Of a stretch of DNA of 64,000 nt, positions 252 to 63,624 are shown one piece after another. The notes below the pieces were generated by a model. It had not been told where the DNA came from and did not search any database. It saw nothing but the letters and a program-made list of their open reading frames with translations. Within the stretch, counting starts at the first letter, position 1. Each line of letters opens with the position of its first letter. The DNA lies in the IMG/VR virus record IMGVR_UViG_3300037725_000018, positions 159,358-223,357 of that record, one strand, 5' to 3'. Both the position numbers and the translations under genes were made by a program.

Positions 252-431
252 ATGATTGTGCTTTACGAGTCTAGAAAAGAGTGGGGGGAAATCCGCGAAT
301 TTTCTGTTGGTCCCAACCCCACGATAGAGCTTCGGGGAGAAACGTGCTCGATTGAAAACTTAGGTGATAACATTACAACCGTCAAATTCAAAAAAATTAA
401 AATCAAGCGGGCCTTAAAAGAAATTTCATAA
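252..431 (+). CDS. Family A small protein
   Basis: 59 aa from internal ATG of track ORF 108..431; starts MIVLYES, basic C-terminal helix IKRALKEIS. Confidence 0.75.
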   Translation: MIVLYESRKEWGEIREFSVGPNPTIELRGETCSIENLGDNITTVKFKKIKIKRALKEIS

Positions 432-438
432 AAAAGTA

Positions 439-466
439 GGAACCGGGCTTTATTCTCCCTGTTAAA
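439..466 (+). promoter_or_regulatory. Class B ECF-like promoter for 515..796
   Basis: GGAAC-N17-GTTAAA, then AAAGAGGGAACCCTTTT 5' hairpin. Confidence 0.65.
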
Positions 467-514
467 GCAAACGGAAAAAGAGGGAACCCTTTTCACCAAC
501 GAACCCTGTTTGCT

Positions 515-796
515 ATGAACGCCACGAAAGAAGAGATCCGCGAAAAGTTTTCTCTTCCGTCTGACAGTCGGGCAAGGAAGCTTCGGGACATGTTTTCGAA
601 GCACGTCACGTATCTGGACAAGAGCCTAAACCGGGCTTGGAAGGGTCCGGTCGAAGCGGTTGTGCCGAAAGAGAAGGCTAAAGACATGCGGGAAGCAATG
701 AGCTTCATCGGTGCTCATGTGGATAAGACCGAAAGCCTTCCGGGTGGCCGCGTTCGGCTTTACAGCCGGGGCTACTACGTTCACGTTGGGGCTTAA
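515..796 (+). CDS. Hypothetical phage protein (class B cassette inserted in family A array)
   Basis: 93 aa ORF with own promoter, 5' hairpin and terminator. Confidence 0.75.
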   Translation: MNATKEEIREKFSLPSDSRARKLRDMFSKHVTYLDKSLNRAWKGPVEAVVPKEKAKDMREAMSFIGAHVDKTESLPGGRVRLYSRGYYVHVGA

Positions 797-829
797 ATGA
801 AGCGACAGCTTCCCATTCAAACCCGCAGG

Positions 830-863
830 AAGGCCCACAGGGGGAAACCTCTTGTGGGCCTTT
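830..863 (+). terminator. Intrinsic terminator-like hairpin
   Basis: AAGGCCCACAGGGGG-AAA-CCTCTTGTGGGCCTT after 515..796. Confidence 0.7.
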
Positions 864-953
864 GCCATACCCTTTTCGGTTCCGAAAACTTCTTAGAAAC
901 AATTGTGTGGACAGGCAATATCTACCAGTAGACAAAGAAAAATAACAAAGAAA

Positions 954-1175
954 ATGATTGCAGTTATAGTCTCGACGCCAAAAGACTACGGAGAAGCTTC
1001 AAAGCTTCGGATCTATCTTTCCGTTAATGACGTTTTTAAAGAAGGAAAAAAAGACTCCAAAGAAATTCAGGTTATTTCAACCCCAAATTTCACCCGAAAG
1101 CAAAACAACCAGATTGAAGAAAAGAGTTGGTTTAAAAATATAAGGTCTAAAAAAGAACAAGTAAAAAACCTTTAA
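954..1175 (+). CDS. Family A small protein
   Basis: 73 aa, MIAVIVS (internal ATG of track ORF 903..1175). Confidence 0.75.
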   Translation: MIAVIVSTPKDYGEASKLRIYLSVNDVFKEGKKDSKEIQVISTPNFTRKQNNQIEEKSWFKNIRSKKEQVKNL

Positions 1176-1179
1176 CGGC

Positions 1180-1332
1180 ATGATCATCATACTTAGCGAA
1201 ACAGAAGAAGAAGATTATAAAGTGGAAGAAGTATTTGAATATGGCCCCGCTTCTATGTCTTGGTATCTTACAGATGATGAAGTTTCGAGAGAAGAGATTA
1301 GACACATAAAAAAAGACCTAAAAACATGGTAG
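1180..1332 (+). CDS. Family A small protein
   Basis: 50 aa, MIIILSETEEE...IRHIKKDLKTW; below track cutoff, read by hand. Confidence 0.7.
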   Translation: MIIILSETEEEDYKVEEVFEYGPASMSWYLTDDEVSREEIRHIKKDLKTW

Positions 1333-1658
1333 TTTTCTTTGAATCAAAAACGGAATTTTCAAATGCGCTTTCGAACTCTACGTCCAAAAACACACTTCTT
1401 GATCTTTCGGTTCGCGTAAACGGTGTTAAGCTTTCGTACGCGGAACACGAAAAGACATACAAAAAACATGTAAGTCCCAAATCTTTAAAGTTAGCGCAGA
1501 AGCAGGGGACGGTATTTGGGCTTTCCGACGAAAAAAAGCGGCTTACTCTGTCCGGTGGAAAGCTTGTATACAATTCGGGTTCATTTGCACTTTCTTCTGC
1601 TTTGTTTTCAACGTTTAAGTCAATATCCGGCTCGCACAAAACTGGCAATATAATATAA
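1326..1658 (+). CDS. Family A small protein (VNG subfamily)
   Basis: 110 aa, MVVFFES...VRVNG. Confidence 0.75.
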   Translation: MVVFFESKTEFSNALSNSTSKNTLLDLSVRVNGVKLSYAEHEKTYKKHVSPKSLKLAQKQGTVFGLSDEKKRLTLSGGKLVYNSGSFALSSALFSTFKSISGSHKTGNII

Positions 1659-1674
1659 CACAAGTTGAAAACCC

Positions 1675-1845
1675 ATGATTATCGTTGTGTCTGAAAATGA
1701 AAGAGATCGAAGAAGTCTTGTTGGCTTTCCTCTTCACAACAAGGGAGGATGCAAGCACGTACTAAACACAAAGCAATCTAAAGCCGCAAACTTGAAAAAG
1801 TCTATCGTGGCTAGAATTGAAATTGTGAACTTGCACGGTTGGTAA
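1675..1845 (+). CDS. Family A small protein
   Basis: 56 aa, MIIVVSENE; read by hand. Confidence 0.7.
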   Translation: MIIVVSENERDRRSLVGFPLHNKGGCKHVLNTKQSKAANLKKSIVARIEIVNLHGW

Positions 1846-1851
1846 AAGAAG

Positions 1852-2031
1852 ATGATTTTCATAATGTACGAAACAAAAAAAGAGCAGAGGCGTTCTTACA
1901 TTAACGCAAATGGAGAAGGTTTTTGTTTTTTTGGTTGGGAGGGAATGAAACTTTTGCCGGAAACAAAACTTAAAAGAATTGTAATCGAAAGGTTCAGAGA
2001 AGCTAGAGTGAAAAATGGTCGTCATTTTTGA
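1852..2031 (+). CDS. Family A small protein
   Basis: 59 aa, MIFIMYETKKE; read by hand. Confidence 0.7.
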   Translation: MIFIMYETKKEQRRSYINANGEGFCFFGWEGMKLLPETKLKRIVIERFREARVKNGRHF

Positions 2032-2260
2032 AACAGAAAAAGAAGTCGTTGACGCAATTTCATATAAAAACGTTCCCGCAAAGTGGGAAGTCAACGGAAA
2101 ACCAGTAGAGGCAAAAGAGGTTATCGTAATGCCAAATAACCTAACAAAAAATCACTTTCCCGCCCACAAACAAATTGTGAAACGAAATCTTCACGAAAAG
2201 CAAGAAGACCTCTCGATTCTAAAAAAAGTTTGGTCGTTTGCAGCGTCAATCTTCAACTAA
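2015..2260 (+). CDS. Family A small protein (VNG subfamily)
   Basis: 81 aa, MVVIFETEKE...WEVNG. Confidence 0.8.
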   Translation: MVVIFETEKEVVDAISYKNVPAKWEVNGKPVEAKEVIVMPNNLTKNHFPAHKQIVKRNLHEKQEDLSILKKVWSFAASIFN

Positions 2261-2262
2261 AA

Positions 2263-2442
2263 ATGCCCATGCCCATAATCGTCGGAAAAAGAAAGGAGCT
2301 TAAAGAGGCTTACGTTATCCCAATGACACAAAGACAGTCCCGGACCTACAAATGGTTTAAGCATTCTGAAGTAAGAAATATGGGAACTAAGATGGTCAAG
2401 GAGTTAATCAGAGAAATATCATCTGAACTTAAAAGAAATTGA
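2263..2442 (+). CDS. Family A small protein (atypical start)
   Basis: 59 aa, MPMPIIVG...MVKELIREISSELKRN. Confidence 0.65.
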   Translation: MPMPIIVGKRKELKEAYVIPMTQRQSRTYKWFKHSEVRNMGTKMVKELIREISSELKRN

Positions 2443-2452
2443 AACCCAAGTT

Positions 2453-2638
2453 ATGTTCATTGTATTTGAAAGCGAAAAAGAGCGAAAAGAAGCTGTAAAC
2501 ACCGACAAATCATCGGTTCGTTCATTTTGGATTGAGGAAGAAATGATTTCAATTAAAAACGTCATGCGGGTTTACAGTTGGGACAACATGCGGCTCGGAA
2601 AGTCTCAGGCACGCAAAAAAGTAGCACATAGGCTTTAA
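2453..2638 (+). CDS. Family A small protein
   Basis: 61 aa, MFIVFESEKE. Confidence 0.8.
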   Translation: MFIVFESEKERKEAVNTDKSSVRSFWIEEEMISIKNVMRVYSWDNMRLGKSQARKKVAHRL

Positions 2639-2645
2639 TAAGGAT

Positions 2646-2831
2646 ATGCAAATTATATTCGAGACGTACCTAAAATTTCAAGCTCACTCCACGCCGGAGC
2701 TTAGTTTTTCCGGCTTCAAGGTCGGGGAAGCAAGAGACGTGCCTTCCCGTTGCATCCATGTTAAAAACACAGACACGATCCGGTCTATAAAAAAGCGGCT
2801 TCGAAAAGGGCTCGCGCAAGGCAAAAATTGA
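2646..2831 (+). CDS. Family A small protein
   Basis: 61 aa, MQIIFET...IRSIKKRLRKGL. Confidence 0.8.
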   Translation: MQIIFETYLKFQAHSTPELSFSGFKVGEARDVPSRCIHVKNTDTIRSIKKRLRKGLAQGKN

Positions 2832-2919
2832 CTTCCATATCGAGACCGGGTAGAGAAACGATTTCAAAAGACCTACCCCCCTTCAAATAACAAGTTCAAT
2901 TGACCCCCCCCCCTTAAGG

Positions 2920-3081
2920 ATGGTTTTGATTGCACATTCGCATAAAGAACTTCAAATTGCAGTTAGAATGTCACACGACCTTCTTCTTGTTCACGATTCG
3001 GTTTTCTTTCCCCGCTCTTCATACTGGATTCGAAACAAAGAAAATATGCATCGGTTCATAAAAAGTGATTTGAAAGTGTAA
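2920..3081 (+). CDS. Family A small protein
   Basis: 53 aa, MVLIAHSHKE...HRFIKSDLKV; read by hand. Confidence 0.65.
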   Translation: MVLIAHSHKELQIAVRMSHDLLLVHDSVFFPRSSYWIRNKENMHRFIKSDLKV

Positions 3082-3098
3082 AGATTAGTAGTAACATC

Positions 3099-3308
3099 AT
3101 GGTTGTTGTATATACAAAGAAAACATTAAGGAAGATAGAATCAAAGGTCGTGGAAAAGTTTTTAGAAGAAGATGAGGACGCTTTTATTATGCCAGTGGAG
3201 CTTCCGGTGTTGAACTACAAGACGCAGCGGAGCATTGTCCAAAACGCGATTCAGTCTACGTCGTGGGAAGAATACACAAACCCTGAAATGCGACCTCAAA
3301 ACATATGA
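3099..3308 (+). CDS. Family A small protein
   Basis: 69 aa, MVVVYTK. Confidence 0.75.
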   Translation: MVVVYTKKTLRKIESKVVEKFLEEDEDAFIMPVELPVLNYKTQRSIVQNAIQSTSWEEYTNPEMRPQNI

Positions 3309-3487
3309 TCATTATCCTTCCAGAAAACGAAAAAGAACACGGGGCAGCTCTTTGGCGTCGGTGGGACAAAAATCCCAAGATACTTGTCCTTCCATACCGA
3401 ATGTCAAGTTTTCAAGGAGAAGGTGGGGCAGCCGTTTTCGGGAGGGTAAGGTTTCACGTAAAAGACAAACTAAGTAAAAAAGCATGA
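3305..3487 (+). CDS. Family A small protein
   Basis: 60 aa, MIIILPENEKE; ATGA overlap with upstream gene. Confidence 0.8.
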   Translation: MIIILPENEKEHGAALWRRWDKNPKILVLPYRMSSFQGEGGAAVFGRVRFHVKDKLSKKA

Positions 3488-3678
3488 TGGTTTTGATCTT
3501 TCAAGATGAAGAGTAAAGAAGTAAGGTTCTTGAGCAGCCCGGAGCAACCTTTTTTTCAAAAGTCAAATGCCACGACAAGAACATTAGAATTAAAGAAACG
3601 TGTGAATTTCTTCAAGGCAGGCTAAGAAACTCTAAAAAGCTGTCTAAACTTTTGAGGCTAAAAATTAAAACGGCTTAA
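3484..3678 (+). pseudogene. Family A member with in-frame stop
   Basis: MMVLIFQDEE*RSKVLEQ...KLLRLKIKTA*; single TAA at 3514-3516, frame otherwise open to 3678. Confidence 0.65.
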
Positions 3679-3686
3679 TAGAAGAA

Positions 3687-3881
3687 ATGCAAATCATCTT
3701 CAACGACATAGACGAAATCAAATCGTGCATCGAAGAGTCAATATATGCCAACTCGAAAACGCGCACCCTTAGAGGAACAAATGTTTCCATAAACGTTTGG
3801 GACATGTGGCACACCGATTATGTGCGAGCTAATGGAGCAGAGGTTATAAAAAAAGTTAGATCCAAATTGAAAGAAGAATGA
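3687..3881 (+). CDS. Family A small protein
   Basis: 64 aa, MQIIFNDIDE...VIKKVRSKLKEE. Confidence 0.8.
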   Translation: MQIIFNDIDEIKSCIEESIYANSKTRTLRGTNVSINVWDMWHTDYVRANGAEVIKKVRSKLKEE

Positions 3882-4093
3882 TTATATACTTCGAACGTGG
3901 CGAAAAACAAAAAAGCCACCTGCGCGGCCTTTTTGGAAGGCAAAAGAAAACAGACCTTTCCTTCCACTTCGGAAAGATTGAAGACACAGACTGCTATTGG
4001 TATAACATTTCCGGAAACACAAAACGAAAAAGACCGGGTGAAGGTCTTAGAAGCAGAGAGCACTTAAAATTCATAACCGAAATTGCAATTTGA
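3878..4093 (+). CDS. Family A small protein
   Basis: 71 aa, MIIYFER; ATGA overlap. Confidence 0.8.
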   Translation: MIIYFERGEKQKSHLRGLFGRQKKTDLSFHFGKIEDTDCYWYNISGNTKRKRPGEGLRSREHLKFITEIAI

Positions 4094-4100
4094 AAACCCC

Positions 4101-4286
4101 ATGCATATACTTTTTGAGGACACACGCGAATTTAAAAAATACGACGGGACGTTTTATTACTTCAACGGTGGGCCGGAAATTTACGCGCATGAAGCAAGTG
4201 TTTTGACATACAGACGCAAAAAACTTACATTAGACAAACAAAAAAGAAAGCGCGTAAAAAAGAGGCTCAAAAAAAACATCGCATAA
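4101..4286 (+). CDS. Family A small protein
   Basis: 61 aa, MHILFEDTRE...RVKKRLKKNIA. Confidence 0.75.
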   Translation: MHILFEDTREFKKYDGTFYYFNGGPEIYAHEASVLTYRRKKLTLDKQKRKRVKKRLKKNIA

Positions 4287-4305
4287 CGGCGGCAGCAGGC
4301 AAAAA

Positions 4306-4491
4306 ATGGTTATTATAGTATCGGAAGAAAACACAAAACAAAAAACGTGGACGTTTTACGATAAAAATTTTTTTTCAGATCACAAGACGTGGTTTATCCC
4401 CACGGAGTCTTATGAAATAGAGCAAGGAGAAAGGTTCCCAAGCGTCCGGAGAAAAGCGAATACATCCCATATCATCAAGTCTCTTTCTTAA
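4306..4491 (+). CDS. Family A small protein
   Basis: 61 aa, MVIIVSEE. Confidence 0.8.
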   Translation: MVIIVSEENTKQKTWTFYDKNFFSDHKTWFIPTESYEIEQGERFPSVRRKANTSHIIKSLS

Positions 4492-4495
4492 ACCA

Positions 4496-4663
4496 GTGAT
4501 TATAGCAATTCCAGAATCCAAATTTGAGTGGCAAGTTTTCTATCAAGACTTACCTTTTAAAGATTTAAAAGTTGTCCCGGAACCCCGAATTTACGATAAC
4601 TACATAGAAATGTCAAGAAAAAGAACGGTTCTTTCGATAATAAAGGAACAAACAACTTCTTGA
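4496..4663 (+). CDS. Family A small protein (GTG start)
   Basis: 55 aa, MIIAIPES; read by hand. Confidence 0.65.
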   Translation: MIIAIPESKFEWQVFYQDLPFKDLKVVPEPRIYDNYIEMSRKRTVLSIIKEQTTS

Positions 4664-4665
4664 AA

Positions 4666-4725
4666 ATGATCATCACGATTCCAGCGGAGAATAATAAAGA
4701 AAGAGAAAAATGGGAATGCTTGTAA
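4666..4725 (+). pseudogene. Truncated family A stub
   Basis: 19 aa MIITIPAENNKEREKWECL*, overlapped by next member. Confidence 0.5.
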
Positions 4726-4892
4726 TCTTTGAAAATTTTGAAGAAATGGACAAAGTTTCAAAACCGAAGGGAAAGTACGAGCTTGTCGGGGAAGCAAAAG
4801 TCCCCGCGTTCAACGTCCACGTCAAAAGAAACTTCAAACGCCCAAGCGTGTTTAGAAGAGAAATGAAAATAGCTGTGTTCTCTAAGTTGTAA
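4716..4892 (+). CDS. Family A small protein
   Basis: 58 aa, MLVIFENFEE. Confidence 0.75.
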   Translation: MLVIFENFEEMDKVSKPKGKYELVGEAKVPAFNVHVKRNFKRPSVFRREMKIAVFSKL

Positions 4893-5431
4893 GAGCAAAA
4901 GCAATAAGACAGCCATCCCGACCACTTTTCCTTGGACATGATACAGACAAAGAGTATTACAACATCCGGTCACACAAACCCGAAAGCGGTTTATTAGTAG
5001 GTGGTTTGCATATAAACGGGGAAAAGCTTTCTAGCCATTGGATATATGTCAGGTGAGTGAATGGAAGAAAGCCCCACACAAGGCAAATAAAACCTCACGT
5101 GAGGTAAAATATGGTTTTTATATTGAGACCGGGGCGAAAACCATTTCATTTTTACCGGGGGTACCGATTATAGCAAGTTATTTTTACCCCCACCCCCCTG
5201 TAGAATGTACACAGCCTTGTAGTAGATGGTAGAATGTACATGTGAATTCAAAAAGCCGTTTCAAAACGAAATGCAAAAGCTTCAATTCAAGACAAAGCAC
5301 ATGTAGTTTTTACCGTTTGCAGTTTTGGCATGGAATTTGCCTTCTGCGTCAAAACAAGACGTGTAGCTTTTACAAGGGAGGTGGGCGTTGGCATACAGTT
5401 TGCTTTAAAAAACCATAAACAGATAATTGGC

Positions 5432-5593
5432 ATGATTGTTGTTATCGAAAGAAGAGAAGACATAAACGGCTCCAGCCTTAAATTTTTTGATTCTGAAATA
5501 AGGCTAAAAGTAGGCAGGGCAGTTGTTCGTAGGTGGTGCCCGTCTGGGTGGCCTTTACGATACAAAAGAGAGTACATCCGAAAGCATATTTGA
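5432..5593 (+). CDS. Family A small protein
   Basis: 53 aa, MIVVIER...REYIRKHI (internal ATG of 5330..5593). Confidence 0.7.
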   Translation: MIVVIERREDINGSSLKFFDSEIRLKVGRAVVRRWCPSGWPLRYKREYIRKHI

Positions 5594-5612
5594 AAACCAG
5601 TTGAAAAAAGAT

Positions 5613-5786
5613 ATGATCGTTATCCTTGTTGAAGAGAAGGCCAATTCTTTTAGCGTCGAAGACTTTGAAAAAGAAGTTGCAGTTATCCCAAGTGCAAAGG
5701 CGTACGTCTCTCTTTCGGTTCTTTCAAATGTTCAAGGGCTAAAGATGCGGAGGCGACATGTGGATAATGCCATTCGAAAGCTTTAA
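5613..5786 (+). CDS. Family A small protein
   Basis: 57 aa, MIVILVEE (internal ATG of 5523..5786). Confidence 0.7.
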   Translation: MIVILVEEKANSFSVEDFEKEVAVIPSAKAYVSLSVLSNVQGLKMRRRHVDNAIRKL

Positions 5787-5893: not shown

Positions 5894-5920
5894 AATTGGG
5901 TGCCCGAATGTGGCCGACGT

Positions 5921-8638: not shown

Positions 8639-8812
8639 ATGATCGTCGTTATAGACAAAAAAGAAAGAGAAGACTTCGCTGCAACCAAGTTTCACAAGTT
8701 CGTAAACGTCCCTCCGGGTATGAGAAAAGACGTGGGGTGTCTTCATAACTTAGAAGACGGGTCCGGGCACCTTCTTCGGTTTGCAAAAGTTTTAGTCAAG
8801 TCTTACTTGTGA
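8639..8812 (+). CDS. Family A small protein
   Basis: 57 aa, MIVVIDKKERE; read by hand. Confidence 0.7.
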   Translation: MIVVIDKKEREDFAATKFHKFVNVPPGMRKDVGCLHNLEDGSGHLLRFAKVLVKSYL

Positions 8813-8886
8813 AAGAAAAAGCTGACGTGCGTGGTCCCCGTATACAATTTTTATTAGCCAATGCCAATGTCAATTTTTATCCGTTT

Positions 8887-9099
8887 ATGGTTGTTCTTAT
8901 TGAAACAAAAACAGAAGACGAAGAGTTTTACAATTACGTGTCCGGGATGCGGGTTTTGGTTTTGGGGACTTTTGAAACGGTCCCTTTATATCGAATACCG
9001 GATTTTGAAATTTTTAAGGTAGCCAAAACTGAAGGCTTCTGTGTAAAGGAGAATGGTCGGCTCACAATTCTTCATCACGGAATAGCAAAAGTGAGGTAA
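8887..9099 (+). CDS. Family A small protein, paralog of 9105..9308
   Basis: 70 aa, MVVLIET; shares FET..LY...F.....K.EG....E.GRL. Confidence 0.8.
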   Translation: MVVLIETKTEDEEFYNYVSGMRVLVLGTFETVPLYRIPDFEIFKVAKTEGFCVKENGRLTILHHGIAKVR

Positions 9100-9104
9100 A
9101 AAAG

Positions 9105-9308
9105 ATGGTTCTTGTTTTCGAAGACGAAACAGAAAAAGAAAGGTTTGACAAACAGGTGTCCGAAACGGGCGTGGGAGTGTTTGGCCTTTTTGAAACCCTT
9201 TCTTTGTATAAAGAAAAAGCATTTAAGGTTCTTCGGTTTGCCAAAAGAGAAGGGCTAATTACAAGAGAAGACGGGCGTCTCATTTTAGTTTACTATGGAG
9301 TAGAGTAA
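9105..9308 (+). CDS. Family A small protein
   Basis: 67 aa, MVLVFEDETE. Confidence 0.8.
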   Translation: MVLVFEDETEKERFDKQVSETGVGVFGLFETLSLYKEKAFKVLRFAKREGLITREDGRLILVYYGVE

Positions 9309-9324
9309 AACGTAGGGAAAAAAG

Positions 9325-9549
9325 ATGGTTATTCTTGTTGAAAACAAAAGAGAAAAAACCCCTTTGAAAAAAGCGTGTGGGGGAAGAGTTGAAGACGAAT
9401 TTGAACTTTTAAAAGAGCGGATTCTGTTGCACGCGGGGCACTCGTCTCCGATGGATTTTCTAGTGTACATCAAAAAAAGGCTCCACTCTTGCCCAAGCAC
9501 CGGAAGACTTACCTGCGACATAACGCCAATACGTAACAACAAAAAATAA
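9325..9549 (+). CDS. Family A small protein
   Basis: 74 aa, MVILVEN. Confidence 0.75.
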   Translation: MVILVENKREKTPLKKACGGRVEDEFELLKERILLHAGHSSPMDFLVYIKKRLHSCPSTGRLTCDITPIRNNKK

Positions 9550-9558
9550 CAGACAGTT

Positions 9559-9756
9559 GTGGTTGTTATCATTGAAGACTCGAAACTTGTTTCAGAAATT
9601 CAAGACTACTTCTCCGTCTGTTTAGAGGAAAATCTTGATGTGTATGAGCAGGTTTGGCTTTGCCGTGTGGATAGCAGCAAGCCGGAATATTTGCGTTTTA
9701 TGAAAAAACGCGGATTTGACAGGATAGAAGAGAACAAAAGAATGATTTTTAAGTAA
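9559..9756 (+). CDS. Family A small protein (GTG start)
   Basis: 65 aa, MVVIIEDS. Confidence 0.75.
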   Translation: MVVIIEDSKLVSEIQDYFSVCLEENLDVYEQVWLCRVDSSKPEYLRFMKKRGFDRIEENKRMIFK

Positions 9757-9808
9757 GCATACGCAAGGGAAAAATTAGCTCCTTCATCAAAACTGCGTAA
9801 AGTGTGCA

Positions 9809-9994
9809 ATGATTGTTTTCGTTGTTGAAAGCACAGAAGGCAAGTCCGCGTTTTTTGATTTGACAAACAAAAACCGGAAAAACTTTGGAAGCGGCGTAAG
9901 CGTGGTTTTCTCTCATAAGTACGTCGGCTCCGGAACGGCCCGAGAATGCGCTTTGAAAGTCAAACAAAAGATCAAAAAATCCAAGCAAAAGTAA
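9809..9994 (+). CDS. Family A small protein
   Basis: 61 aa, MIVFVVESTE. Confidence 0.8.
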   Translation: MIVFVVESTEGKSAFFDLTNKNRKNFGSGVSVVFSHKYVGSGTARECALKVKQKIKKSKQK

Positions 9995-10000
9995 TGAGCC

Positions 10001-10186
10001 GTGGTTATCCTAATAGAAAGCAAAAAAGAGGAAAAAGAGCTTAATAACTTAGTGAGGAGTTCTGGTTTTGAACTTGACTTTCTTGAAAGACTTCCTGCCT
10101 TTTGGCACGTGCCGGAACTTTTGCTGCGTGACCTGAAAACGGTAGGTTTTAAAACAGAACAAAGGCGATTAAAATTTAATCGGTAG
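10001..10186 (+). CDS. Family A small protein (GTG start)
   Basis: 61 aa, MVILIESKKE. Confidence 0.8.
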   Translation: MVILIESKKEEKELNNLVRSSGFELDFLERLPAFWHVPELLLRDLKTVGFKTEQRRLKFNR

Positions 10187-10201
10187 TAACCGAATCAGCT
10201 A

Positions 10202-10396
10202 ATGATTGTCATTTTGAAAAACATACAGGAGGGCAGGCATTTAGAAAATGTTAAGGGGGTGGGTCCCAAAAGAGAAGAGGTCGTATACGAATATAGATAT
10301 GGGCCACGCCTGCGGGTTCAAATCCTAAGAGATTGCAGAAAAGGGGCAAAAGAAGGTGGGGAGCGGCTGAAAATTCCGGGCCGAATACGTCAGTAA
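10202..10396 (+). CDS. Family A small protein, paralog of 10413..10613
   Basis: 64 aa, MIVILKN; shares R...L.D.R.G.K..G.RLK.P. Confidence 0.8.
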   Translation: MIVILKNIQEGRHLENVKGVGPKREEVVYEYRYGPRLRVQILRDCRKGAKEGGERLKIPGRIRQ

Positions 10397-10412
10397 AAAC
10401 AGATATGTAAAT

Positions 10413-10613
10413 ATGATCGTCATTGCAAATAACTTAAATGAAGACCGTTGGATAGTGGGACACCCGAATATCGAAAGAAAAGAAATTGCCTACGTTTACG
10501 TGTGGACACGGGAAGAGAGGACCCGTCTTTTAAAAGACTTCAGGCGGGGGATAAAAAAGAGTGGCAAAAGGCTAAAAATGCCCGATCACATGGAAACAAG
10601 TAAAAAATGGTAA
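10413..10613 (+). CDS. Family A small protein
   Basis: 66 aa, MIVIANN. Confidence 0.8.
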   Translation: MIVIANNLNEDRWIVGHPNIERKEIAYVYVWTREERTRLLKDFRRGIKKSGKRLKMPDHMETSKKW

Positions 10614-10624
10614 AAACGCTTCCC

Positions 10625-10816
10625 ATGATATTCATCTTCAAAGAGTTTGAGTACTCAAACAACATTGACTTCTTTAAAGAGACGATTATTTCAAGCGACG
10701 GGTTGGTAAAGTCCGGTTCTGTCGTTGCCGATTCTCCCGGAACAATCCCTCTAACAAAGAGTTCATACAAAAAAATCAAAGAATACGTCAAAACCCGGTT
10801 GTCAAACAAACAGTGA
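10625..10816 (+). CDS. Family A small protein
   Basis: 63 aa, MIFIFKE...KKIKEYVKTRL. Confidence 0.75.
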   Translation: MIFIFKEFEYSNNIDFFKETIISSDGLVKSGSVVADSPGTIPLTKSSYKKIKEYVKTRLSNKQ

Positions 10817-10998
10817 TCATCATCGAAGAAAACATGTTTGAACAGAAGCTAACGTTTCCCATTCGGCTTGCCCCCGAAGAACGAGTAAGCCGAAAAGACG
10901 CTTTCTTAAACGGGTGTATCTCTGCGCTTACTTTGCATAACCCAAGTGAAGGCTGGACGAAAAGGCGGCTTTGTTTAATCACCGAACGTTACCAATAA
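10813..10998 (+). CDS. Family A small protein (GTG start)
   Basis: 61 aa, MIIIEEN; GTGA overlap. Confidence 0.7.
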   Translation: MIIIEENMFEQKLTFPIRLAPEERVSRKDAFLNGCISALTLHNPSEGWTKRRLCLITERYQ

Positions 10999-11017
10999 CG
11001 AAACCCTTTGAAAAGAT

Positions 11018-11215
11018 ATGGTCGTTTGCTTTGAAAACGAAAATGAACTTGTTTCCAATACAACGATTCTTTTCGGGCGCAAGTCCGTAAACGGAATCAT
11101 TCTTGACCCTGAAGAAATTTGTATAGTCAAAAGACCGGATAATATCCATGCCCAAGTTGAAAAAAGCTTTTCGACCTGTCGCCTCACCTGTTTTGTAAAA
11201 AGTTCACGCACATAA
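11018..11215 (+). CDS. Family A small protein (VNG subfamily)
   Basis: 65 aa, MVVCFENENE...SVNG. Confidence 0.8.
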   Translation: MVVCFENENELVSNTTILFGRKSVNGIILDPEEICIVKRPDNIHAQVEKSFSTCRLTCFVKSSRT

Positions 11216-11226
11216 AAACCGGACTC

Positions 11227-11427
11227 ATGGTTGTCTATTTTGAAAAAAGAACGGAGTTTCTAAACCATTCACAATTCACAAATCGATTTCGAACAACAAT
11301 AACCGTTAACGGGCAGGTTCTTGTCAATTGCGAATATATCGTCTCGCCCAATAAAAAAGCGCCCCTTCAAATAAAAGAAAAGGACGTTCCTTTGTATCCG
11401 GGAACGCGCCTTGTTTTCGTTTTTTAA
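11227..11427 (+). CDS. Family A small protein (VNG subfamily)
   Basis: 66 aa, MVVYFEKRTE...TVNG. Confidence 0.8.
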   Translation: MVVYFEKRTEFLNHSQFTNRFRTTITVNGQVLVNCEYIVSPNKKAPLQIKEKDVPLYPGTRLVFVF

Positions 11428-15547: not shown

Positions 15548-15748
15548 ATGATACAAGTTGTTGTGGATACAAGTGAAGAATCCGCTTGGATGCAGACGTT
15601 TTCAAAAGAGTTTCCAACTGAAGAAGTGGACTATTTTCATTCTGGTAAGGCAATGGAAGAGCTTGGGCTAGCCCCAATAGAAACCGGATATCGAATCTAC
15701 ATTTCAAATAAGCTTGAACACAGGTTTAAAGCGACAAAAAAGACATGA
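15548..15748 (+). CDS. Family A small protein
   Basis: 66 aa, MIQVVVDTSEE. Confidence 0.7.
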   Translation: MIQVVVDTSEESAWMQTFSKEFPTEEVDYFHSGKAMEELGLAPIETGYRIYISNKLEHRFKATKKT

Positions 15749-15900
15749 CGATATTGATTGAAAAACCCAATGAGGCAAACCGTTTTTTAAACTTTAAGAT
15801 ACGGTCGGGTGAACGCATGATTGCAAAACCTAGTTCCCTCAAAAACAAAATTATTGCATTGCGCCAAATCAAAGAATCTGTAAGGGCCGAAAAGAAATGA
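15745..15900 (+). CDS. Family A small protein
   Basis: 51 aa, MTILIEKPNE; ATGA overlaps at both ends; read by hand. Confidence 0.7.
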   Translation: MTILIEKPNEANRFLNFKIRSGERMIAKPSSLKNKIIALRQIKESVRAEKK

Positions 15901-16679: not shown

Positions 16680-16724
16680 TTTTGCTGTTTGTGGAAAGAA
16701 ACTTTCTTTTGTCGTCTTTGTTAC

Positions 16725-16752: not shown

Positions 16753-16764
16753 TTTTTTGCTTAT

Positions 16765-16941: not shown

Positions 16942-16943
16942 AC

Positions 16944-56825: not shown

Positions 56826-57269
56826 CTACTCTACAACGCGGTCAATTTGATCTGTAAGACTTGTTGTGTACACAAACGATTGAATACCGGACATGTTTCG
56901 AAGATCAAATGTCCGGTACGGATTTTGCTCGAACCCAAAACTTACAATCACGCTATCGTAAAAAGACCTTGGGTTTGGAATAAAGAGGTCCAAAACCGGA
57001 AGAAAACCTTCAAGCGTGTCTGAAACGTTGTCCGGTAAAAACCCAAACGCGGTCAAGACCAAATCTAAAATCTCTTGCTCTGAAATATACTTTATATCAA
57101 TTCCGTGAAGTTTAGAATCGACGTTTTTTTCAAGCACAATCACCTTTCTAGTCTCGGTTTTTCCAGAGGATTTCAAATACTTAAACTCAATAAAGTCCCC
57201 GGACTCCACGTCTTGAAGAACCGTTGGTGATTTATCTGATATTTGATCTTCGTGGTCAAATTCTCTCAT
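56826..57269 (-). CDS. Hypothetical protein (SH3/WYL-like N-terminus, YRTF C-terminal motif)
   Basis: IEFKY..SG..ETRKVIVL...LHGID...YRTFDLRNM. Confidence 0.6.
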   Translation of the reverse strand: MREFDHEDQISDKSPTVLQDVESGDFIEFKYLKSSGKTETRKVIVLEKNVDSKLHGIDIKYISEQEILDLVLTAFGFLPDNVSDTLEGFLPVLDLFIPNPRSFYDSVIVSFGFEQNPYRTFDLRNMSGIQSFVYTTSLTDQIDRVVE

Positions 57270-57460
57270 AGCTCTTTAACACGCCTTTCAAGTTTTTTTT
57301 CAAAGCATCCCGGATATGAAAAAACAGAGTCTTGACTAGTTATTTCACAAGACTTCACGTTAAGAAGAGCCGCTCGAACCGAATCGGTTACTAAATCGGA
57401 CGCATACTTGTCATACTTTTCATTGGACTCTCTGTTGCGGTCAAAAAATATGATAACCAT
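57266..57460 (-). CDS. Family A small protein (dispersed)
   Basis: 64 aa, MVIIFFDRNRE. Confidence 0.75.
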   Translation of the reverse strand: MVIIFFDRNRESNEKYDKYASDLVTDSVRAALLNVKSCEITSQDSVFSYPGCFEKKLERRVKEL

Positions 57461-57463
57461 TTT

Positions 57464-57637
57464 TTAAAAACTGTTTGTGATTATACCCTTCACTTTTTTA
57501 GCGCCCCATGAAGGAAGGATAACCTCGTCTTCTACGGAGTCTAACAGATGATCTTCGCTATATACAAATTCAGAAGAGTAAAAGTTAACCAATCCTTCAT
57601 GGAGCTTTTCATCTTTTCTTGAAAATATGATTACCAT
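57464..57637 (-). CDS. Family A small protein (dispersed)
   Basis: 57 aa, MVIIFSRKDE...VKGIITNSF; read by hand. Confidence 0.7.
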   Translation of the reverse strand: MVIIFSRKDEKLHEGLVNFYSSEFVYSEDHLLDSVEDEVILPSWGAKKVKGIITNSF

Positions 57638-60919: not shown

Positions 60920-61865
60920 TATATCCTTTCATTCCAGAGGGATACGAGTCGAAACGTTCTCCATCTTGATCACAAATTCCGTACTTTGAATCTCCGTTAA
61001 ACTGCTTTGAAAATGGGCAAAAGGCACACTTGAACTTTTCCGGGCGCTTTTCCATTGGCTCGGTCGTCTTTTTTCCACCCGGAAAGCCTGTCCGGAGAAA
61101 CTCGTTGAGCCAGTTGTCTACTTGTTCATGGGCCTCACTTGACGTTGGTGGAGTCCATTCGTTGATTCGGCCCGAATCCCAACGCGGGTCAACTTCTCTT
61201 TGGGCAATCCAATACGAAACGTCAACTTGCTCTTTTTTTACTCCAAGCTTGTTTGCGTAAAAGTCTCTGTATGCCAAAAGCTGGTTGACGCGCTCTGGCT
61301 CTTGTTTGTCCCACTTGTTCCAACCGCTTGTTGACGTTTTAATGTCAATGATCTTGTAAGACTCGCGGTGCTTTTCTTTTAAGATCACGTCAAGATAGCC
61401 CACAAACACAACTCCGTCTTTTACCTCTTCTTCAATGGGAACCTCAATACCAACAAGTTCAGTAAAGCTCGGATCAAAGTAATAGTCCCGGTACTTTTTG
61501 AACTCGTCAAGTATCTTTTCGGTCTTCTTGAAGTATTCAGCAAGCTCTCTAGGCGTTGTTGGGGTATCTTCGATACTTGCCCAAGGCTCATTTTCGTTCG
61601 TCTGTTTAAACGCCTCTTGAAGCTTCTCTTTAAACATTTGCTTCAAGTCAATGGCCTTAGCCTTTTCTTTTCCCTCCTCGTACAGAACTTTTAGGTAATG
61701 CTGGATTGTTTCGTGAAAAGCCGTTCCCCCGATTGTGTGAATGCTATCTGTCGGAGGTTTATGGCCTTGCACGTACCTGTACTCCCAAGACTTCGGGCAA
61801 CTCACAAACTTTTTCATTTGCGAGTAACTAATTGTGTGACTATCTGACTTTTTTGAGTTTTGCAT
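60891..61865 (-). CDS. PD-(D/E)XK nuclease, Cas4/RecB-like exonuclease
   Basis: ISYSQ....SCP..W; GTAFHETI; IE; GYLD; IIDIKT; QL.AY; CAFCP...C. Confidence 0.88.
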   Translation of the reverse strand: MQNSKKSDSHTISYSQMKKFVSCPKSWEYRYVQGHKPPTDSIHTIGGTAFHETIQHYLKVLYEEGKEKAKAIDLKQMFKEKLQEAFKQTNENEPWASIEDTPTTPRELAEYFKKTEKILDEFKKYRDYYFDPSFTELVGIEVPIEEEVKDGVVFVGYLDVILKEKHRESYKIIDIKTSTSGWNKWDKQEPERVNQLLAYRDFYANKLGVKKEQVDVSYWIAQREVDPRWDSGRINEWTPPTSSEAHEQVDNWLNEFLRTGFPGGKKTTEPMEKRPEKFKCAFCPFSKQFNGDSKYGICDQDGERFDSYPSGMKGYIDDKWIDED

Positions 61866-61892
61866 GAAGAAAGACCTTGTTTGGTTCTTTCT

Positions 61893-62111
61893 TCATATAT
61901 AGTCAGACTGTATTTTATTATGAAGTTCTTGTTTAGATTCTACTCTTAGACTAGAAGAAAATTTTTGGTAGTCGTATGCCCGAATGCCTAGCTTGCTTTT
62001 TTCTCTCCGGATGAAAAGGAGTGAAAAATTTTCATCCTTGATTAAAGAAAGAAACGGATTATCAAAGTTTGGAATACTTTGGTAATATGTGCGATCAAGA
62101 AAGATAACCAT
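61893..62111 (-). CDS. Family A small protein (dispersed)
   Basis: 72 aa, MVIFLDR...LHNKIQSDYI. Confidence 0.7.
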   Translation of the reverse strand: MVIFLDRTYYQSIPNFDNPFLSLIKDENFSLLFIRREKSKLGIRAYDYQKFSSSLRVESKQELHNKIQSDYI

Positions 62112-62117
62112 CGATCT

Positions 62118-62687
62118 TTATCGGTTATCTCCGTCTCCACGAAGAACGTTTCTTTCGCTTCTGTCAAGTAGCTTGTTTACATTTAAGCTCATAACCGTTT
62201 CTAAACTAAAGAATCCGGCATGATGAGATATATGTTTCATGGTGCTAAATATAGTCTTCAAATTTTGAGCAATGTCTTCAATCTTTTCTTCTTTTCCATC
62301 GTCACCGCGAATAATCTTTTTGATTCTTCCATTCACGCGAACAGAACTTAAAAGAAGTTGTTCGGAGTATTCTCCGATTTGTTTAATCTGCGGTCCAAGT
62401 GGGCTTCCGGAAATATCTTGATCTAACTCTTCTTGAAACTGTTCTGTGTCTATATCAAGCTCATCAATAATACGAGCAGTGTACCACATAACGTCTCCAA
62501 GCTCACCCGCAAGACTTTTCCGTTCTTTTTGGCCGTACCTTTTGTTTCTGGCTCCGGCGTATTTAGAAGCCTTTTCATGAAACTCTCCAGCTTCATCGGA
62601 AAGCCCAAGTGCAACATAAGAAATTGCTTTTTCAGATGGATAAACTGCCGTTTCTTTTGTTTTTTCGATGTACTGTTGAATATTCAT
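62118..62687 (-). CDS. MazG-like nucleotide pyrophosphohydrolase with duplicated, degenerate second half
   Basis: LGLSDEAGE...GELGDVMWY; C-terminal N..KL.DR..R.VL.G.GDNR. Confidence 0.85.
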   Translation of the reverse strand: MNIQQYIEKTKETAVYPSEKAISYVALGLSDEAGEFHEKASKYAGARNKRYGQKERKSLAGELGDVMWYTARIIDELDIDTEQFQEELDQDISGSPLGPQIKQIGEYSEQLLLSSVRVNGRIKKIIRGDDGKEEKIEDIAQNLKTIFSTMKHISHHAGFFSLETVMSLNVNKLLDRSERNVLRGDGDNR

Positions 62688-62719
62688 AACTGTATTTGTC
62701 TTATGGCTTTTGTTTGTTC

Positions 62720-63049
62720 TTAAAGGTTATCTCCGTTTTCAAACCAATGGTCATACCGAAAATCGTATCGGGTACGCTCTCTTTTTGTGGCAAATTTCGG
62801 AGGGTGTGTTTCAACCAAGTTCGGCTCCATCCACTCGATTTCAATCTCGTTGACGTTCTTTTTTAGCTTTTCAAACGCCTCTTGAAGAAGCCGATTGTTT
62901 TGCTCGATCTCCCGTCGCATAGACCCAAGACGATCCTCTCCGGTCATTTGCTTGTACTTCTTATATGCCTCTTTTAACTCTTGGTTCTTTTTGGCGTAAA
63001 ACTTACGAATTTCAGAAGGAAATTGAGAGTTTTTGATTCGCTGTTTCAT
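62720..63049 (-). CDS. Hypothetical coiled-coil protein
   Basis: 109 aa ORF. Confidence 0.65.
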   Translation of the reverse strand: MKQRIKNSQFPSEIRKFYAKKNQELKEAYKKYKQMTGEDRLGSMRREIEQNNRLLQEAFEKLKKNVNEIEIEWMEPNLVETHPPKFATKRERTRYDFRYDHWFENGDNL

Positions 63050-63055
63050 AGTCTG

Positions 63056-63424
63056 TTAATATCTTGTGTTGTTTTGTGGTTCGTTTTCTTCGGAAGAAGA
63101 AGGCGTTTGACCTTCTGTTCGTTCTTTATGTAGACTGTACATGATCTTTAGGTAGTTCAAAGCGTCTTCGAACCGCCCGTCAATCTTTTCTTCTTGATGT
63201 ATGTTGTCGCTCTTTGCATATGACATAAGGCTCGTCACATGCTTCATAAAGTAGACTGTAGCAACTAAGATCGGGTCTACGTCAAGAAAGTCCGCAATGA
63301 CCCGGAAGTTTTTATGTACGTCTTTTGCGTCCCCACTATACGCGGGGTTCTTCCTCTCTTCAGTTCTTCTTGCGTTCTTTAAAAGCTTGTTTTTTCTCTT
63401 CTGGTACTTTTTCTTTGTTGTCAT
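63056..63424 (-). CDS. Nucleotide-modification-associated domain 1-like (all-alpha NTP-PPase)
   Basis: KN.AY....DV..NF...KH......I..RF.DA.NY pattern. Confidence 0.65.
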   Translation of the reverse strand: MTTKKKYQKRKNKLLKNARRTEERKNPAYSGDAKDVHKNFRVIADFLDVDPILVATVYFMKHVTSLMSYAKSDNIHQEEKIDGRFEDALNYLKIMYSLHKERTEGQTPSSSEENEPQNNTRY

Positions 63425-63624
63425 GTCTCTTTTTCTTTCCTTAGAAATGTCTTCACAAGATGCTCTTCATCGTCGGTGGTGTAAATGGATTGCCATTTTA
63501 AGGAAACGTAAGACCCGGATCTGTTGTACCGGGTTTTCATTTCATCCCCTTCTTGGCACACAGATTTGAAAAATTCTCTATCTGGTTTATTTTCTCCCCT
63601 AGAAATGTCAAATACGAATGTCAT
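63421..63624 (-). CDS. Family A-like small protein (dispersed)
   Basis: 67 aa, MTFVFD; ATGA overlaps at both ends. Confidence 0.6.
   Translation of the reverse strand: MTFVFDISRGENKPDREFFKSVCQEGDEMKTRYNRSGSYVSLKWQSIYTTDDEEHLVKTFLRKEKET

What the first reader, a model, noticed from the sequence alone, without database searches (positions are those of the whole stretch)
252..63624. Candidate new system: about 50 hypervariable mini-proteins sharing one N-terminal beta-strand tag
Seen: 50 ORFs (48 intact, 2 broken; intact ones 50-110 aa, most 50-75) start with Met plus 3-5 hydrophobic residues (mostly I/V/L/F/Y) and then usually E/D/S/N, e.g. MVVIFE, MIIYFE, MFIVFE, MQIIFE, MVLVFE, MVVCFE. An N-cap-like helix often follows (ESEKE, EDETE, NDIDE), and many end in a basic amphipathic helix (IKRALKEIS, IRSIKKRLRK, VIKKVRSKLK, KKIKEYVKTRL, IRNKVIKHISK). 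The middles are unrelated. Third codon positions in the tag vary freely (ATT/ATC/ATA, GTT/GTC/GTA/GTG), so conservation is at the protein level. Established: T-even phage internal proteins (IPI-III) share a short N-terminal capsid-targeting sequence on small, basic, highly variable bodies, and IPI* inhibits GmrSD restriction. Inference: this is either a library of tagged effectors (packaged and injected, or docked on a common partner) or one small beta-alpha-beta-alpha fold diversified into a decoy/anti-defence arsenal. I do not recognise it as a named family.
Basis: partly seen in the sequence, partly recalled or inferred. Interest (0 to 1): 0.92.

Follow-up and report, generated by a model that had tools for sequence, protein, structure and literature searches.

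The report
Phage mini-protein family, shared N-terminal motif
An uncultivated 223-kb jumbo phage carries about 50 real, translated genes for roughly 60-residue basic proteins that share only a 10-17-residue N-terminal strand-plus-helix motif; the family matches nothing known and its function is still unknown.

Summary
I count 46 intact and 2 broken small ORFs (50-110 aa, median 62). Each starts with Met, then 3-5 I/V/L/F/Y, then usually E/D/S/N, and often has a second Glu at position 10. A leave-one-out scoring matrix that keeps 75% of members passes 0.6% of 2,242 control viral ORFs. Conservation is at the amino-acid level. Twelve orthologue pairs in a diverged strain give dN/dS 0.08-0.54, so the genes are coding.

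With the first 12 residues removed, only two recent duplicate pairs remain detectably related. Profile comparisons between subgroups mostly align only the first 16-17 residues. About a third of members also share a C-terminal basic motif.

There is no match in Pfam, PHROGs, PDB, GenBank phages or 1.84 billion protein representatives, and no second array in IMG/VR.

The window is the end of a 223-kb jumbo phage contig. The genes sit in three tight same-strand arrays plus scattered singletons.

Best reading: a lineage-specific, fast-diverging multigene family made by tandem duplication. The constant N-terminal module would serve as a docking or fold-nucleating element, and the proteins are probably an early host-takeover or counter-defence repertoire. 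The function is inferred, not shown. The analogy to T4 capsid targeting is weakly disfavoured.

The parts
252..5786 (+). Array 1, 21 intact members. Starts-ends: 252-431, 954-1175, 1180-1332, 1326-1658, 1675-1845, 1852-2031, 2015-2260, 2263-2442 (atypical, MPMPIIV), 2453-2638, 2646-2831, 2920-3081, 3099-3308, 3305-3487, 3687-3881, 3878-4093, 4101-4286, 4306-4491, 4496-4663 (GTG), 4710-4892, 5432-5593 (internal Met of ORF 5330-5593), 5613-5786. One untagged ORF, 515-796, lies inside the array.
   Evidence: ORF lists and translations. Spacing between neighbours is mostly -20 to +19 nt.
3484..3678 (+). Broken member. It has the tag MMVLIFQDEE, then an in-frame TAA at 3514-3516. The frame is otherwise open and ends in a basic tail.
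   Evidence: The other assemblies are identical here.
4666..4725 (+). 19-codon stub that carries a tag (MIITIPAE...). It is overlapped by member 4710-4892 in another frame and is a remnant of a lost copy.
8639..11427 (+). Array 2, 13 members: 8639-8812, 8887-9099, 9105-9308, 9325-9549, 9559-9756 (GTG), 9809-9994, 10001-10186 (GTG), 10202-10396, 10413-10613, 10625-10816 (ORF opens at 10607), 10813-10998 (GTG), 11018-11215, 11227-11427. It holds the recent duplicates 8887/9105 and 10202/10413.
   Evidence: Twelve orthologues in strain L006 give dN/dS 0.08-0.54. Member 10413 is largely deleted in L006.
15548..17367 (+). Array 3, 6 members: 15548-15748, 15745-15900, 15897-16121, 16765-16941, 16944-17228, 17209-17367.
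44822..45064 (-). Scattered member (MIVITKE), next to thymidylate synthase.
   Evidence: The orthologue in the 74%-level relative L151 keeps the tag (MVVIDF).
45078..45326 (-). Scattered member (MLIILNR).
   Evidence: The orthologue in L151 begins MLIISGR.
57266..57460 (-). Scattered member (MVIIFFD).
57464..57637 (-). Scattered member (MVIIFSR), adjacent to the previous one.
61893..62111 (-). Scattered member (MVIFLDR).
63421..63624 (-). Scattered member (MTFVFDI).
2904..2913 (+). Poly-C tract 8 nt upstream of member 2920-3081. Its length varies between assemblies (C10, C11, C13).

Best explanation
This is a lineage-specific multigene family of at least 50 copies in an uncultivated 223-kb jumbo phage. 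It encodes proteins of about 60 residues, mostly basic.

Shown:
- The genes are coding and under purifying selection.
- They lie in three tightly packed same-strand arrays plus scattered singletons.
- All members share an N-terminal module of 10-17 residues: Met, four beta-branched or aromatic residues, an acidic or polar residue, then a short helix that usually carries Glu at position 10.
- About a third also share a C-terminal hydrophobic-K-K-x-hydrophobic-K motif.
- The bodies are otherwise unrelated in sequence.
- Neither the family nor a similar array is detectable anywhere else.

Inferred:
- The family grew by tandem duplication followed by fast divergence and turnover.
- The constant N-terminal strand-helix is either the nucleus of a small alpha/beta fold or a docking strand for one common partner.
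- The variable body gives each paralogue its own target.
- The arrays are expressed apart from the virion genes, probably early, as a host-takeover or counter-defence repertoire.
For: Real genes: dN/dS is 0.08-0.54 for 12 orthologue pairs. Packing is tight and operon-like, with ATGA overlaps.

Specific motif.

Protein-level conservation, not RNA. Folding energy around the start codon equals that of other genes.

Duplication and turnover:
- Adjacent paralogues 8887/9105 (41% identity) and 10202/10413 (37%), with weaker links such as 8887/10001, 2646/4710 and 1326/11227.
- One nonsense copy and one stub.
- One member deleted in strain L006.
- Members diverge faster than the minus-strand neighbours: mean amino-acid identity about 0.82 against 0.92, and nucleotide identity 82-86% against 90%.

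Second shared element: the C-terminal motif occurs in 13 of 46 members against 2.9 expected.

Structure: a moderate AlphaFold2 model (pLDDT 72.6) places residues 3-5 in a strand, followed by helix 8-14, inside a small alpha/beta unit.

Not in the late class: CTATATAWA occurs three times in the window, each just upstream of a virion gene and never in the arrays. The arrays converge on the tail-fibre module from the opposite strand.

Long-term retention: tagged singletons are kept in a relative whose virion protein is 74% identical.
Against: No expression, localisation or interaction data exist. The host is unknown.

Common descent of all members is not demonstrable. With the tag removed, only two pairs remain related. 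Two of three profile comparisons between subgroups align only 16-17 residues.

The two structure models are of low to moderate confidence (pLDDT 58 and 73) and find no structural neighbour. A shared fold is therefore unproven.

Between orthologues the tag is barely more conserved than the body (87% against 83%).

The promoter argument rests on only three sites.
Confidence: 0.45

Rival explanations
1. Packaged internal proteins. The N-terminal motif would act as a capsid-targeting and protease-processing signal, as in the T4 internal proteins. The basic bodies would be co-packaged with DNA and injected as anti-restriction or takeover factors.
For: All members share an N-terminal tag on small basic bodies. 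An [LIV]-x-E tripeptide, the published consensus for the T4 prohead protease, lies in the first 12 residues of 26 of 46 members. The arrays abut the tail-fibre module.
Against: About 50 different cargo genes is unprecedented. The arrays are separate, convergent units without the CTATATAWA motif seen at virion genes. Tagged singletons lie among nucleotide-metabolism genes. There is no similarity to any internal-protein family in PHROGs or Pfam or to any GenBank phage. The [LIV]-x-E count follows almost automatically from the tag's composition. The phage's head protease and scaffold were not examined.
Confidence: 0.12
2. Handle for a phage-encoded chaperone or unfoldase. The exposed hydrophobic N-terminus followed by an acidic residue would be recognised by the phage's own DnaJ, MoxR-like AAA+ or ClpB-like AAA+ protein. 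That recognition would time the folding, delivery or degradation of the whole set.
For: A DnaJ homologue, an AAA_5 ATPase and a 655-residue double-AAA Clp-like protein are encoded within about 6-18 kb upstream of array 1. The tag is short, hydrophobic and N-terminal.
Against: The link is purely contextual and no co-variation or interaction was tested. From general knowledge, acidic flanks are unfavourable for DnaK-type binding. In the AlphaFold2 model the strand is part of the fold.
Confidence: 0.1
3. Co-assembly element. The aggregation-prone N-terminal strand would pair between paralogues, so that members form mixed oligomers or sheets. The family would then act as one heteromeric assembly rather than as independent binders.
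For: The strand is very beta-prone and is followed by a charged residue. Copy number is high and the termini are conserved.
Against: There is no evidence of co-variation between members. The second model pairs the strand within the monomer. Each body is separately conserved.
Confidence: 0.08
4. Not a protein feature. The motif would reflect a nucleotide-level requirement, such as a translation-initiation signal in a host that lacks Shine-Dalgarno sites, a recombination site, or spurious ORFs.
For: Leaders are A-rich without Shine-Dalgarno sites, and codons 2-5 all have U in the middle position.
Against: Other genes of the same phage lack the motif and start with MK, MN or MA. Third codon positions and synonymous codon usage are unconstrained. 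There is no special RNA structure. dN/dS is below 1 in all 12 pairs tested.
Confidence: 0.03

Closest known systems
T4 internal proteins IPI, IPII and IPIII with their capsid-targeting sequence (established knowledge; sequences neither typed nor fetched)
   Same: Small basic proteins with variable bodies share a short N-terminal element. An [LIV]-x-E tripeptide is present in many members.
   Different: This family has about 50 genes where T4 has three. The tag is a hydrophobic strand of 4-5 residues rather than a longer targeting peptide. There is no sequence or family match. The arrays are not co-located or co-oriented with head genes and lack the candidate late promoter. Packaging and cleavage are untested.
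Blocks of small early or accessory genes in large phages, such as the T4 'hyperplastic' regions and paralogue families in jumbo phages (established knowledge)
   Same: Tightly packed, same-strand small ORFs of unknown function. They evolve fast, show strain-level gain and loss, and are interspersed with homing endonuclease genes.
   Different: As far as I know, those blocks consist mostly of unrelated ORFs or small paralogue groups. Here about 50 genes share one N-terminal module while their bodies have diverged beyond recognition.
Phage anti-defence gene islands (anti-CRISPR and anti-restriction loci)
   Same: Clusters of small, fast-evolving, lineage-restricted proteins with no homologues.
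   Different: No associated regulator gene was looked for. Members are mostly basic. No known anti-defence family was matched in PHROGs or Pfam, and the dedicated anti-defence libraries were not searched. Members of known islands do not share a common terminal motif.
Families with a conserved N-terminus and a variable C-terminus, such as polymorphic toxins and mycobacterial PE/PPE proteins
   Same: A constant N-terminal part is joined to variable remainders, and copy number is high.
   Different: In those families the N-terminal parts are whole trafficking domains of about 100 residues or more, tied to secretion systems and immunity genes. Here the constant part is 10-17 residues on proteins of 60 residues, in a phage, with no paired genes evident.

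Membership tests
T4-type internal proteins with capsid-targeting sequence | An N-terminal targeting peptide that ends at a prohead-protease site (L/I-x-E). | tested here: inconclusive
   [LIV]-x-E occurs within the first 12 residues in 26 of 46 members. This follows from the tag's composition, and no cleavage data exist.
T4-type internal proteins with capsid-targeting sequence | Sequence or profile similarity to known internal virion proteins. | tested here: not met
   No consistent PHROGs or Pfam family across 45 members. tblastn of one member against 50,697 phage genomes gave no match at E up to 10.
T4-type internal proteins with capsid-targeting sequence | Expression together with head genes (late class). 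| tested here: inconclusive
   CTATATAWA is found only upstream of three virion genes and not in the arrays. The arrays are convergent with the virion module. This rests on three sites and there are no transcript data.
T4-type internal proteins with capsid-targeting sequence | Presence in the virion and injection with the DNA. | not testable with these tools
   This needs virion proteomics, and the phage is uncultivated.
T4-type internal proteins with capsid-targeting sequence | A T4-like prohead protease and scaffolding core in the same genome. | not tested
   The head module is outside the window and outside the roughly 20 kb fetched upstream.
One homologous single-domain family (full-length paralogy) | Sequence or profile similarity beyond the N-terminal module across the whole set. 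| tested here: not met
   Without the tag, jackhmmer links only 2 pairs and 0 decoys. Body-only blastp is at chance level. Two of three profile comparisons between subgroups align only 16-17 columns. The third aligns 61 columns at 75% probability.
One homologous single-domain family (full-length paralogy) | Signs of descent by duplication: tandem layout, recent duplicates, a second shared motif. | tested here: met
   Full-length pairs and subclusters are seen. The C-terminal motif occurs in 13 of 46 members against 2.9 expected. Members lie in tandem same-strand arrays.
Any curated protein family or solved fold | A significant match in Pfam, PHROGs, PDB sequences, PDB folds or BFVD folds. | tested here: not met
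   The best Foldseek E-values are 2.3 (PDB) and 0.37 (BFVD).
S4 RNA-binding domain (a lead from the VNG motif of subcluster 11227/11018/2015/1326) | A significant profile match to the S4 domain. | tested here: not met
   Profile A3 against ribosomal protein uS4 gives E = 1.2 and 13 bits. The single sequence gives no hit. Pfam gives no S4 hit at E up to 0.1.

The most novel reading that the evidence does not exclude
The phage would encode a combinatorial library of about 50 mini-binders. Each would carry the same N-terminal beta-strand 'plug', which docks by strand addition onto one common hub. The hub could be a phage machine, such as its Clp-like or MoxR-like ATPase or a packaging or delivery apparatus, or it could be a central host protein. 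One docking site would then be armed with many interchangeable specificity modules. That would be a new organisational principle for phage host-takeover or counter-defence.
Probability: 0.18. Interest if true: 0.85.

Novelty: new variant of a known kind. Interest (0 to 1): 0.6.

Why it matters
Large phages devote much of their genome to small orphan genes whose logic is unknown. Here about 5% of a 223-kb genome is one family whose only common feature is a 10-17-residue N-terminal module. That gives a concrete handle. A single peptide can be fused, mutated or used as bait to ask what all 50 proteins have in common.

If the module is a docking or targeting signal, it would define a new way for phages to deliver or organise many effectors, and a portable tag for doing so. 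If it is only the slowest-evolving core of a small fold, the family is a clean natural example of how far 60-residue proteins can diverge after tandem duplication while staying under selection.

Either way, the set is a compact pool of candidate host-takeover or anti-defence proteins from a little-known phage lineage that is distantly related to the 'huge phages'.

Tried and rejected
- Close DNA matches in GenBank phages: none.
- Pfam and PHROGs on 45 members: only scattered single hits at E above 0.005.
- Word-based homologue search with member 9105-9308: only itself and an 89% strain variant.
- Full HMMER search of 1.84 billion representatives with the subcluster profile A2: only the four paralogues themselves.
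- AlphaFold2 with the whole-family alignment: pLDDT 58, not usable.
- AlphaFold2 with a cleaner 16-sequence alignment: pLDDT 72.6. Foldseek on that model against PDB and BFVD found nothing significant.
- PDB sequence searches: nothing significant. A weak resemblance to the S4 domain was rejected.
- DNA-pattern scans for two or three consecutive tagged starts:
  - The IMG/VR triple pattern returned 21 stretches, of which only this phage has an array.
  - The metagenome scan gave 9 chance matches, and that collection did not return this phage's own contigs.
  - These patterns hit only 1-3 member pairs or triples within the window itself, so absence elsewhere is weak evidence.
- Attempts to reach the arrays in more distant relatives through the 678-residue virion protein: the contigs end before the arrays.
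- The 160-residue neighbour used as an anchor turned out to be a mobile HNH endonuclease, and its best large-contig context is an unrelated phage without tags.
- 41 kb around the best hit in huge phage LR756508.1: no array.
- Bacteroides-type promoter pattern: not enriched.
- Sigma-70 and terminator scans, repeats, Rfam and tandem repeats: nothing that explains the motif.
- RNA-structure and codon-bias explanations: rejected.
- Two literature searches found no description of such a family.

Full report
**Where the window comes from**

The window is the last 64 kb (contig positions 159,358-223,357) of IMGVR_UViG_3300037725_000018, a 223,357-bp viral contig. Near-identical copies occur in several JGI and Logan assemblies. 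It has no close DNA match among 50,697 GenBank phages.

Its gene content is that of a large tailed phage:
- very large fibre-like proteins with YadA-head repeats and an endosialidase-chaperone domain;
- thymidylate synthase and a PD-(D/E)XK exonuclease;
- a MazG-like protein;
- three GT29-like glycosyltransferases;
- one tRNA-Arg.

A 678-residue virion protein has 28-36% relatives in the 'huge phage' genomes LR756500-LR756508. Start codons are preceded by A-rich leaders without Shine-Dalgarno sites. G+C is 43.5%.

**Checking the observation**

Nearly every small plus-strand ORF in 252-5786, 8639-11427 and 15548-17367 has the motif. Six small minus-strand ORFs elsewhere have it too. The motif is Met, then 3-5 I/V/L/F/Y residues, then usually E/D/S/N.

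After checking GTG starts and internal Met starts, I count 46 intact members of 50-110 aa, median 62. Two copies are broken. One has a single in-frame TAA at 3514-3516. The other is a 19-codon stub at 4666-4725.

Four more tagged singletons lie upstream of the window, so the family has at least 50 copies.

Tests against chance:
- Shuffles give a mean of 8.5 tagged ORFs, against 42 observed.
- A leave-one-out position matrix that retains 75% of members passes 0.6% of 2,242 ORFs from 1.1 Mb of unrelated viral contigs and 1 of 187 other window ORFs. At the member median it passes none of the 2,242.
- The density of tagged ORFs in those control contigs is 0.43 per 10 kb. The same pattern finds 25 in the first 18 kb of the window.

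The test is failed by a wide margin.

**Protein feature or nucleotide feature?**

The information around the start lies on the middle base (T) of codons 2-5. Third positions are nearly uninformative. Synonymous codon choice for Ile, Val, Phe and Leu in the tag does not differ significantly from the rest of the genes. Predicted RNA folding energy around the start equals that of other genes of the phage. Other genes of the same phage start with ordinary MK, MN or MA N-termini. The motif is therefore selected at the amino-acid level.

**Are they genes?**

A diverged strain (L006, 82-90% nucleotide identity) covers array 2 and the next minus-strand block. All 12 orthologous members have dN/dS below 1, ranging from 0.08 to 0.54.

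Members diverge faster than their untagged neighbours. Mean amino-acid identity is about 0.82 against 0.92.

There is also turnover. Member 10413 is largely deleted in L006, which leaves its tag fused upstream of the next gene. The window itself holds one nonsense copy and one stub.

Between orthologues the tag is only slightly better conserved than the body (87% against 83%), so each body is itself constrained.

In a more distant relative, whose virion protein is 74% identical, the two singletons next to thymidylate synthase are retained. Their bodies have diverged but the tag is kept.

**What is shared and what is not**

All-against-all blastp finds a few full-length paralogue groups (alignments A2 and A4):
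- 8887/9105/10001/9559;
- 10202/10413;
- 2646/4710;
- 1326/11227/2015/11018, with an invariant VNG.

Everything else aligns only over the first 11-25 residues.

With the first 12 residues removed, iterative HMM searches among the 46 members and 460 shuffled decoys link only 8887/9105 and 10202/10413. Body-only blastp scores are at the level of shuffles.

Profile-profile comparison gave mixed results:
- Subclusters A2 and A4 aligned over 61 columns at 75% probability.
- The broader set A5 aligned to each of them over only 16-17 columns.

Averaged propensities give a strand at residues 2-5 and a helix at 7-13, with no in-register consensus further on.

A second, weaker shared element is the basic C-terminus:
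- net charge of +3 or more in the last 18 residues in 28 of 46 members;
- median pI 9.3;
- a hydrophobic-K/R-x-x-hydrophobic-K/R/S motif in 13 of 46 tails, against 2.9 +/- 1.5 in shuffled tails.

**Structure**

AlphaFold2 with the noisy whole-family alignment gave pLDDT 58.

With a cleaner 16-sequence alignment, the model of 11018-11215 reached pLDDT 72.6 and pTM 0.50. Its elements are:
- strand 3-5;
- helix 8-14;
- strands 15-18, 21-24 and 34-37;
- helix 40-53;
- strand 56-59.

This is a small alpha/beta unit in which the tag is a strand of the fold.

Foldseek found nothing significant in PDB or BFVD. PDB sequence searches gave only a non-significant resemblance of the VNG region to the S4 domain of uS4 (E = 1.2), which I reject.

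**Distribution**

- No Pfam or PHROGs family matches.
- The only homologue of 9105-9308 among 5.8 billion clustered proteins is the strain variant.
- A full HMMER scan of 1.84 billion representatives with the A2 profile returns only the four paralogues.
- tblastn of a canonical member finds nothing in GenBank phages at E up to 10.
- DNA-pattern scans for consecutive tagged starts recover only this phage in IMG/VR and only chance matches in the metagenome collection.
- 41 kb around the best huge-phage hit has no array.

The pattern scans are insensitive. More distant relatives' contigs ended short of the arrays. 'Restricted to this lineage' is therefore the best current statement, not a proof.

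**Context**

The three plus-strand arrays are separated by two minus-strand blocks (about 5.9-8.3 kb and 11.5-15.4 kb). These blocks hold untagged small genes, have higher G+C, and have roughly one hairpin terminator per gene.

The arrays end 20 nt from an HNH homing-endonuclease gene. They converge on the tail-fibre module.

The 9-mer CTATATAWA occurs three times in the window against 0.25 expected. Each copy is directly upstream of a virion gene and none is in the arrays. This is a candidate late promoter.

Upstream of array 1 lie genes for SprT-like and SleB-like proteins, an IF1-like protein, DnaJ, a MoxR-like AAA_5 ATPase, a ClpB-like double AAA+ protein, ferritin and an RNA ligase.

**Interpretation**

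The following is firmly shown:
- This is a real, translated, lineage-restricted multigene family.
- Its only family-wide feature is a 10-17-residue N-terminal strand-helix module.
- About a third of members share a basic C-terminal motif.
- There are clear traces of tandem duplication, fast divergence and gene loss.

The function is inferred. The layout is tight, same-strand operon-like arrays that lie apart from and converge on the virion genes. The arrays lack the candidate late motif, the proteins evolve faster than their neighbours, and tagged singletons sit among nucleotide-metabolism genes. This layout is what early or accessory regions of large phages look like. I therefore favour an early host-takeover or counter-defence repertoire, in which the constant module is a fold nucleus or a common docking strand and the variable body sets the target. 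My confidence in the whole statement is about 0.45. Confidence in the descriptive part is much higher.

The T4-style capsid-targeting reading remains possible, at about 0.12. It has no positive support beyond the shared N-terminus, the basic bodies and the [LIV]-x-E tripeptide, and that tripeptide follows from the tag's composition. I did not type or fetch T4 internal-protein sequences, so that comparison rests on the published description and on the negative family and tblastn searches.

A chaperone or unfoldase handle, and co-assembly through the strand, are speculative alternatives prompted by context. A nucleotide-level or artefact explanation is essentially excluded.

**Novelty and verdict**

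The family belongs to no described family or fold that could be tested. The general kind, blocks of small fast-evolving accessory genes and paralogue expansions in large phages, is known. What is unusual is about 50 copies held together only by one short N-terminal module. I rate it a new variant of a known kind, with interest 0.6. The most novel reading not excluded is a plug-in library of binders that share one docking strand, with probability about 0.18.

Noticed in passing
window 2904-2913: A poly-C tract 8 nt upstream of member 2920-3081 is the only indel among otherwise near-identical assemblies. It is C10 in the window, C11 in L002, L005 and L166, and C13 in L003. It could be a phase-variable tract or a homopolymer assembly error.
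   Followed up: partly
window 50606-56779 (- strand): A glycan-modification cluster: three GT29 sialyltransferase-like proteins (52278-52901, 54778-55434, 55441-56082), a CMP-sugar-type cytidylyltransferase (56075-56779) and a GT25 glycosyltransferase (50606-51256). This is unusual cargo for a phage.
   Followed up: no
window 12796-13002 (- strand); L002 4574-5659; L166 10001-12989 and 17588-19555: Translation and proteostasis genes. There is a 68-residue protein with a sub-threshold match to ribosome modulation factor (E 6e-5, 23.4 bits against a cut-off of 27.9). Upstream of the window are an IF1-like protein, DnaJ, a MoxR-like AAA_5 ATPase with a 633-residue neighbour, and a ClpB-like double AAA+ protein.
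   Followed up: no
window 38321-38329, 39534-39542, 40697-40705 (- strand): CTATATAWA occurs exactly three times against 0.25 expected. Each copy is just upstream of a virion-module gene. It is a candidate late promoter that resembles the T4 late-promoter type.
   Followed up: partly
window 5900-8320 and 11570-15400 (- strand): Two blocks of untagged genes of 56-159 residues interrupt the arrays. Their G+C is higher (0.49), each gene has a strong hairpin terminator, and a recurrent upstream element (ACACGCAAGA followed by a GGGGAA-like run) and 50-54-nt repeats are present. They look like independently transcribed insertions.
   Followed up: partly
window 17387-17869 (- strand): An HNH endonuclease at the junction between array 3 and the tail-fibre module has more than 100 relatives at 39-68% identity, several of them on contigs over 100 kb. 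It is probably a mobile homing endonuclease.
   Followed up: partly
window 36230-38266 (- strand); LR756508.1 340407-341807: A 678-residue virion protein has 28-36% relatives in the 460-735-kb 'huge phage' genomes LR756500-LR756508. This links the 223-kb phage distantly to that group.
   Followed up: partly
L006 1960-2208 versus window 10413-10816: In the diverged strain, member 10413 is mostly deleted. Its first 19 or so codons, tag included, are fused in frame upstream of the next member's own tagged start. This is an example of array turnover.
   Followed up: partly
window 40770-40843 (- strand): A single tRNA-Arg(CCT) lies between the virion module and the small-gene region.
   Followed up: no
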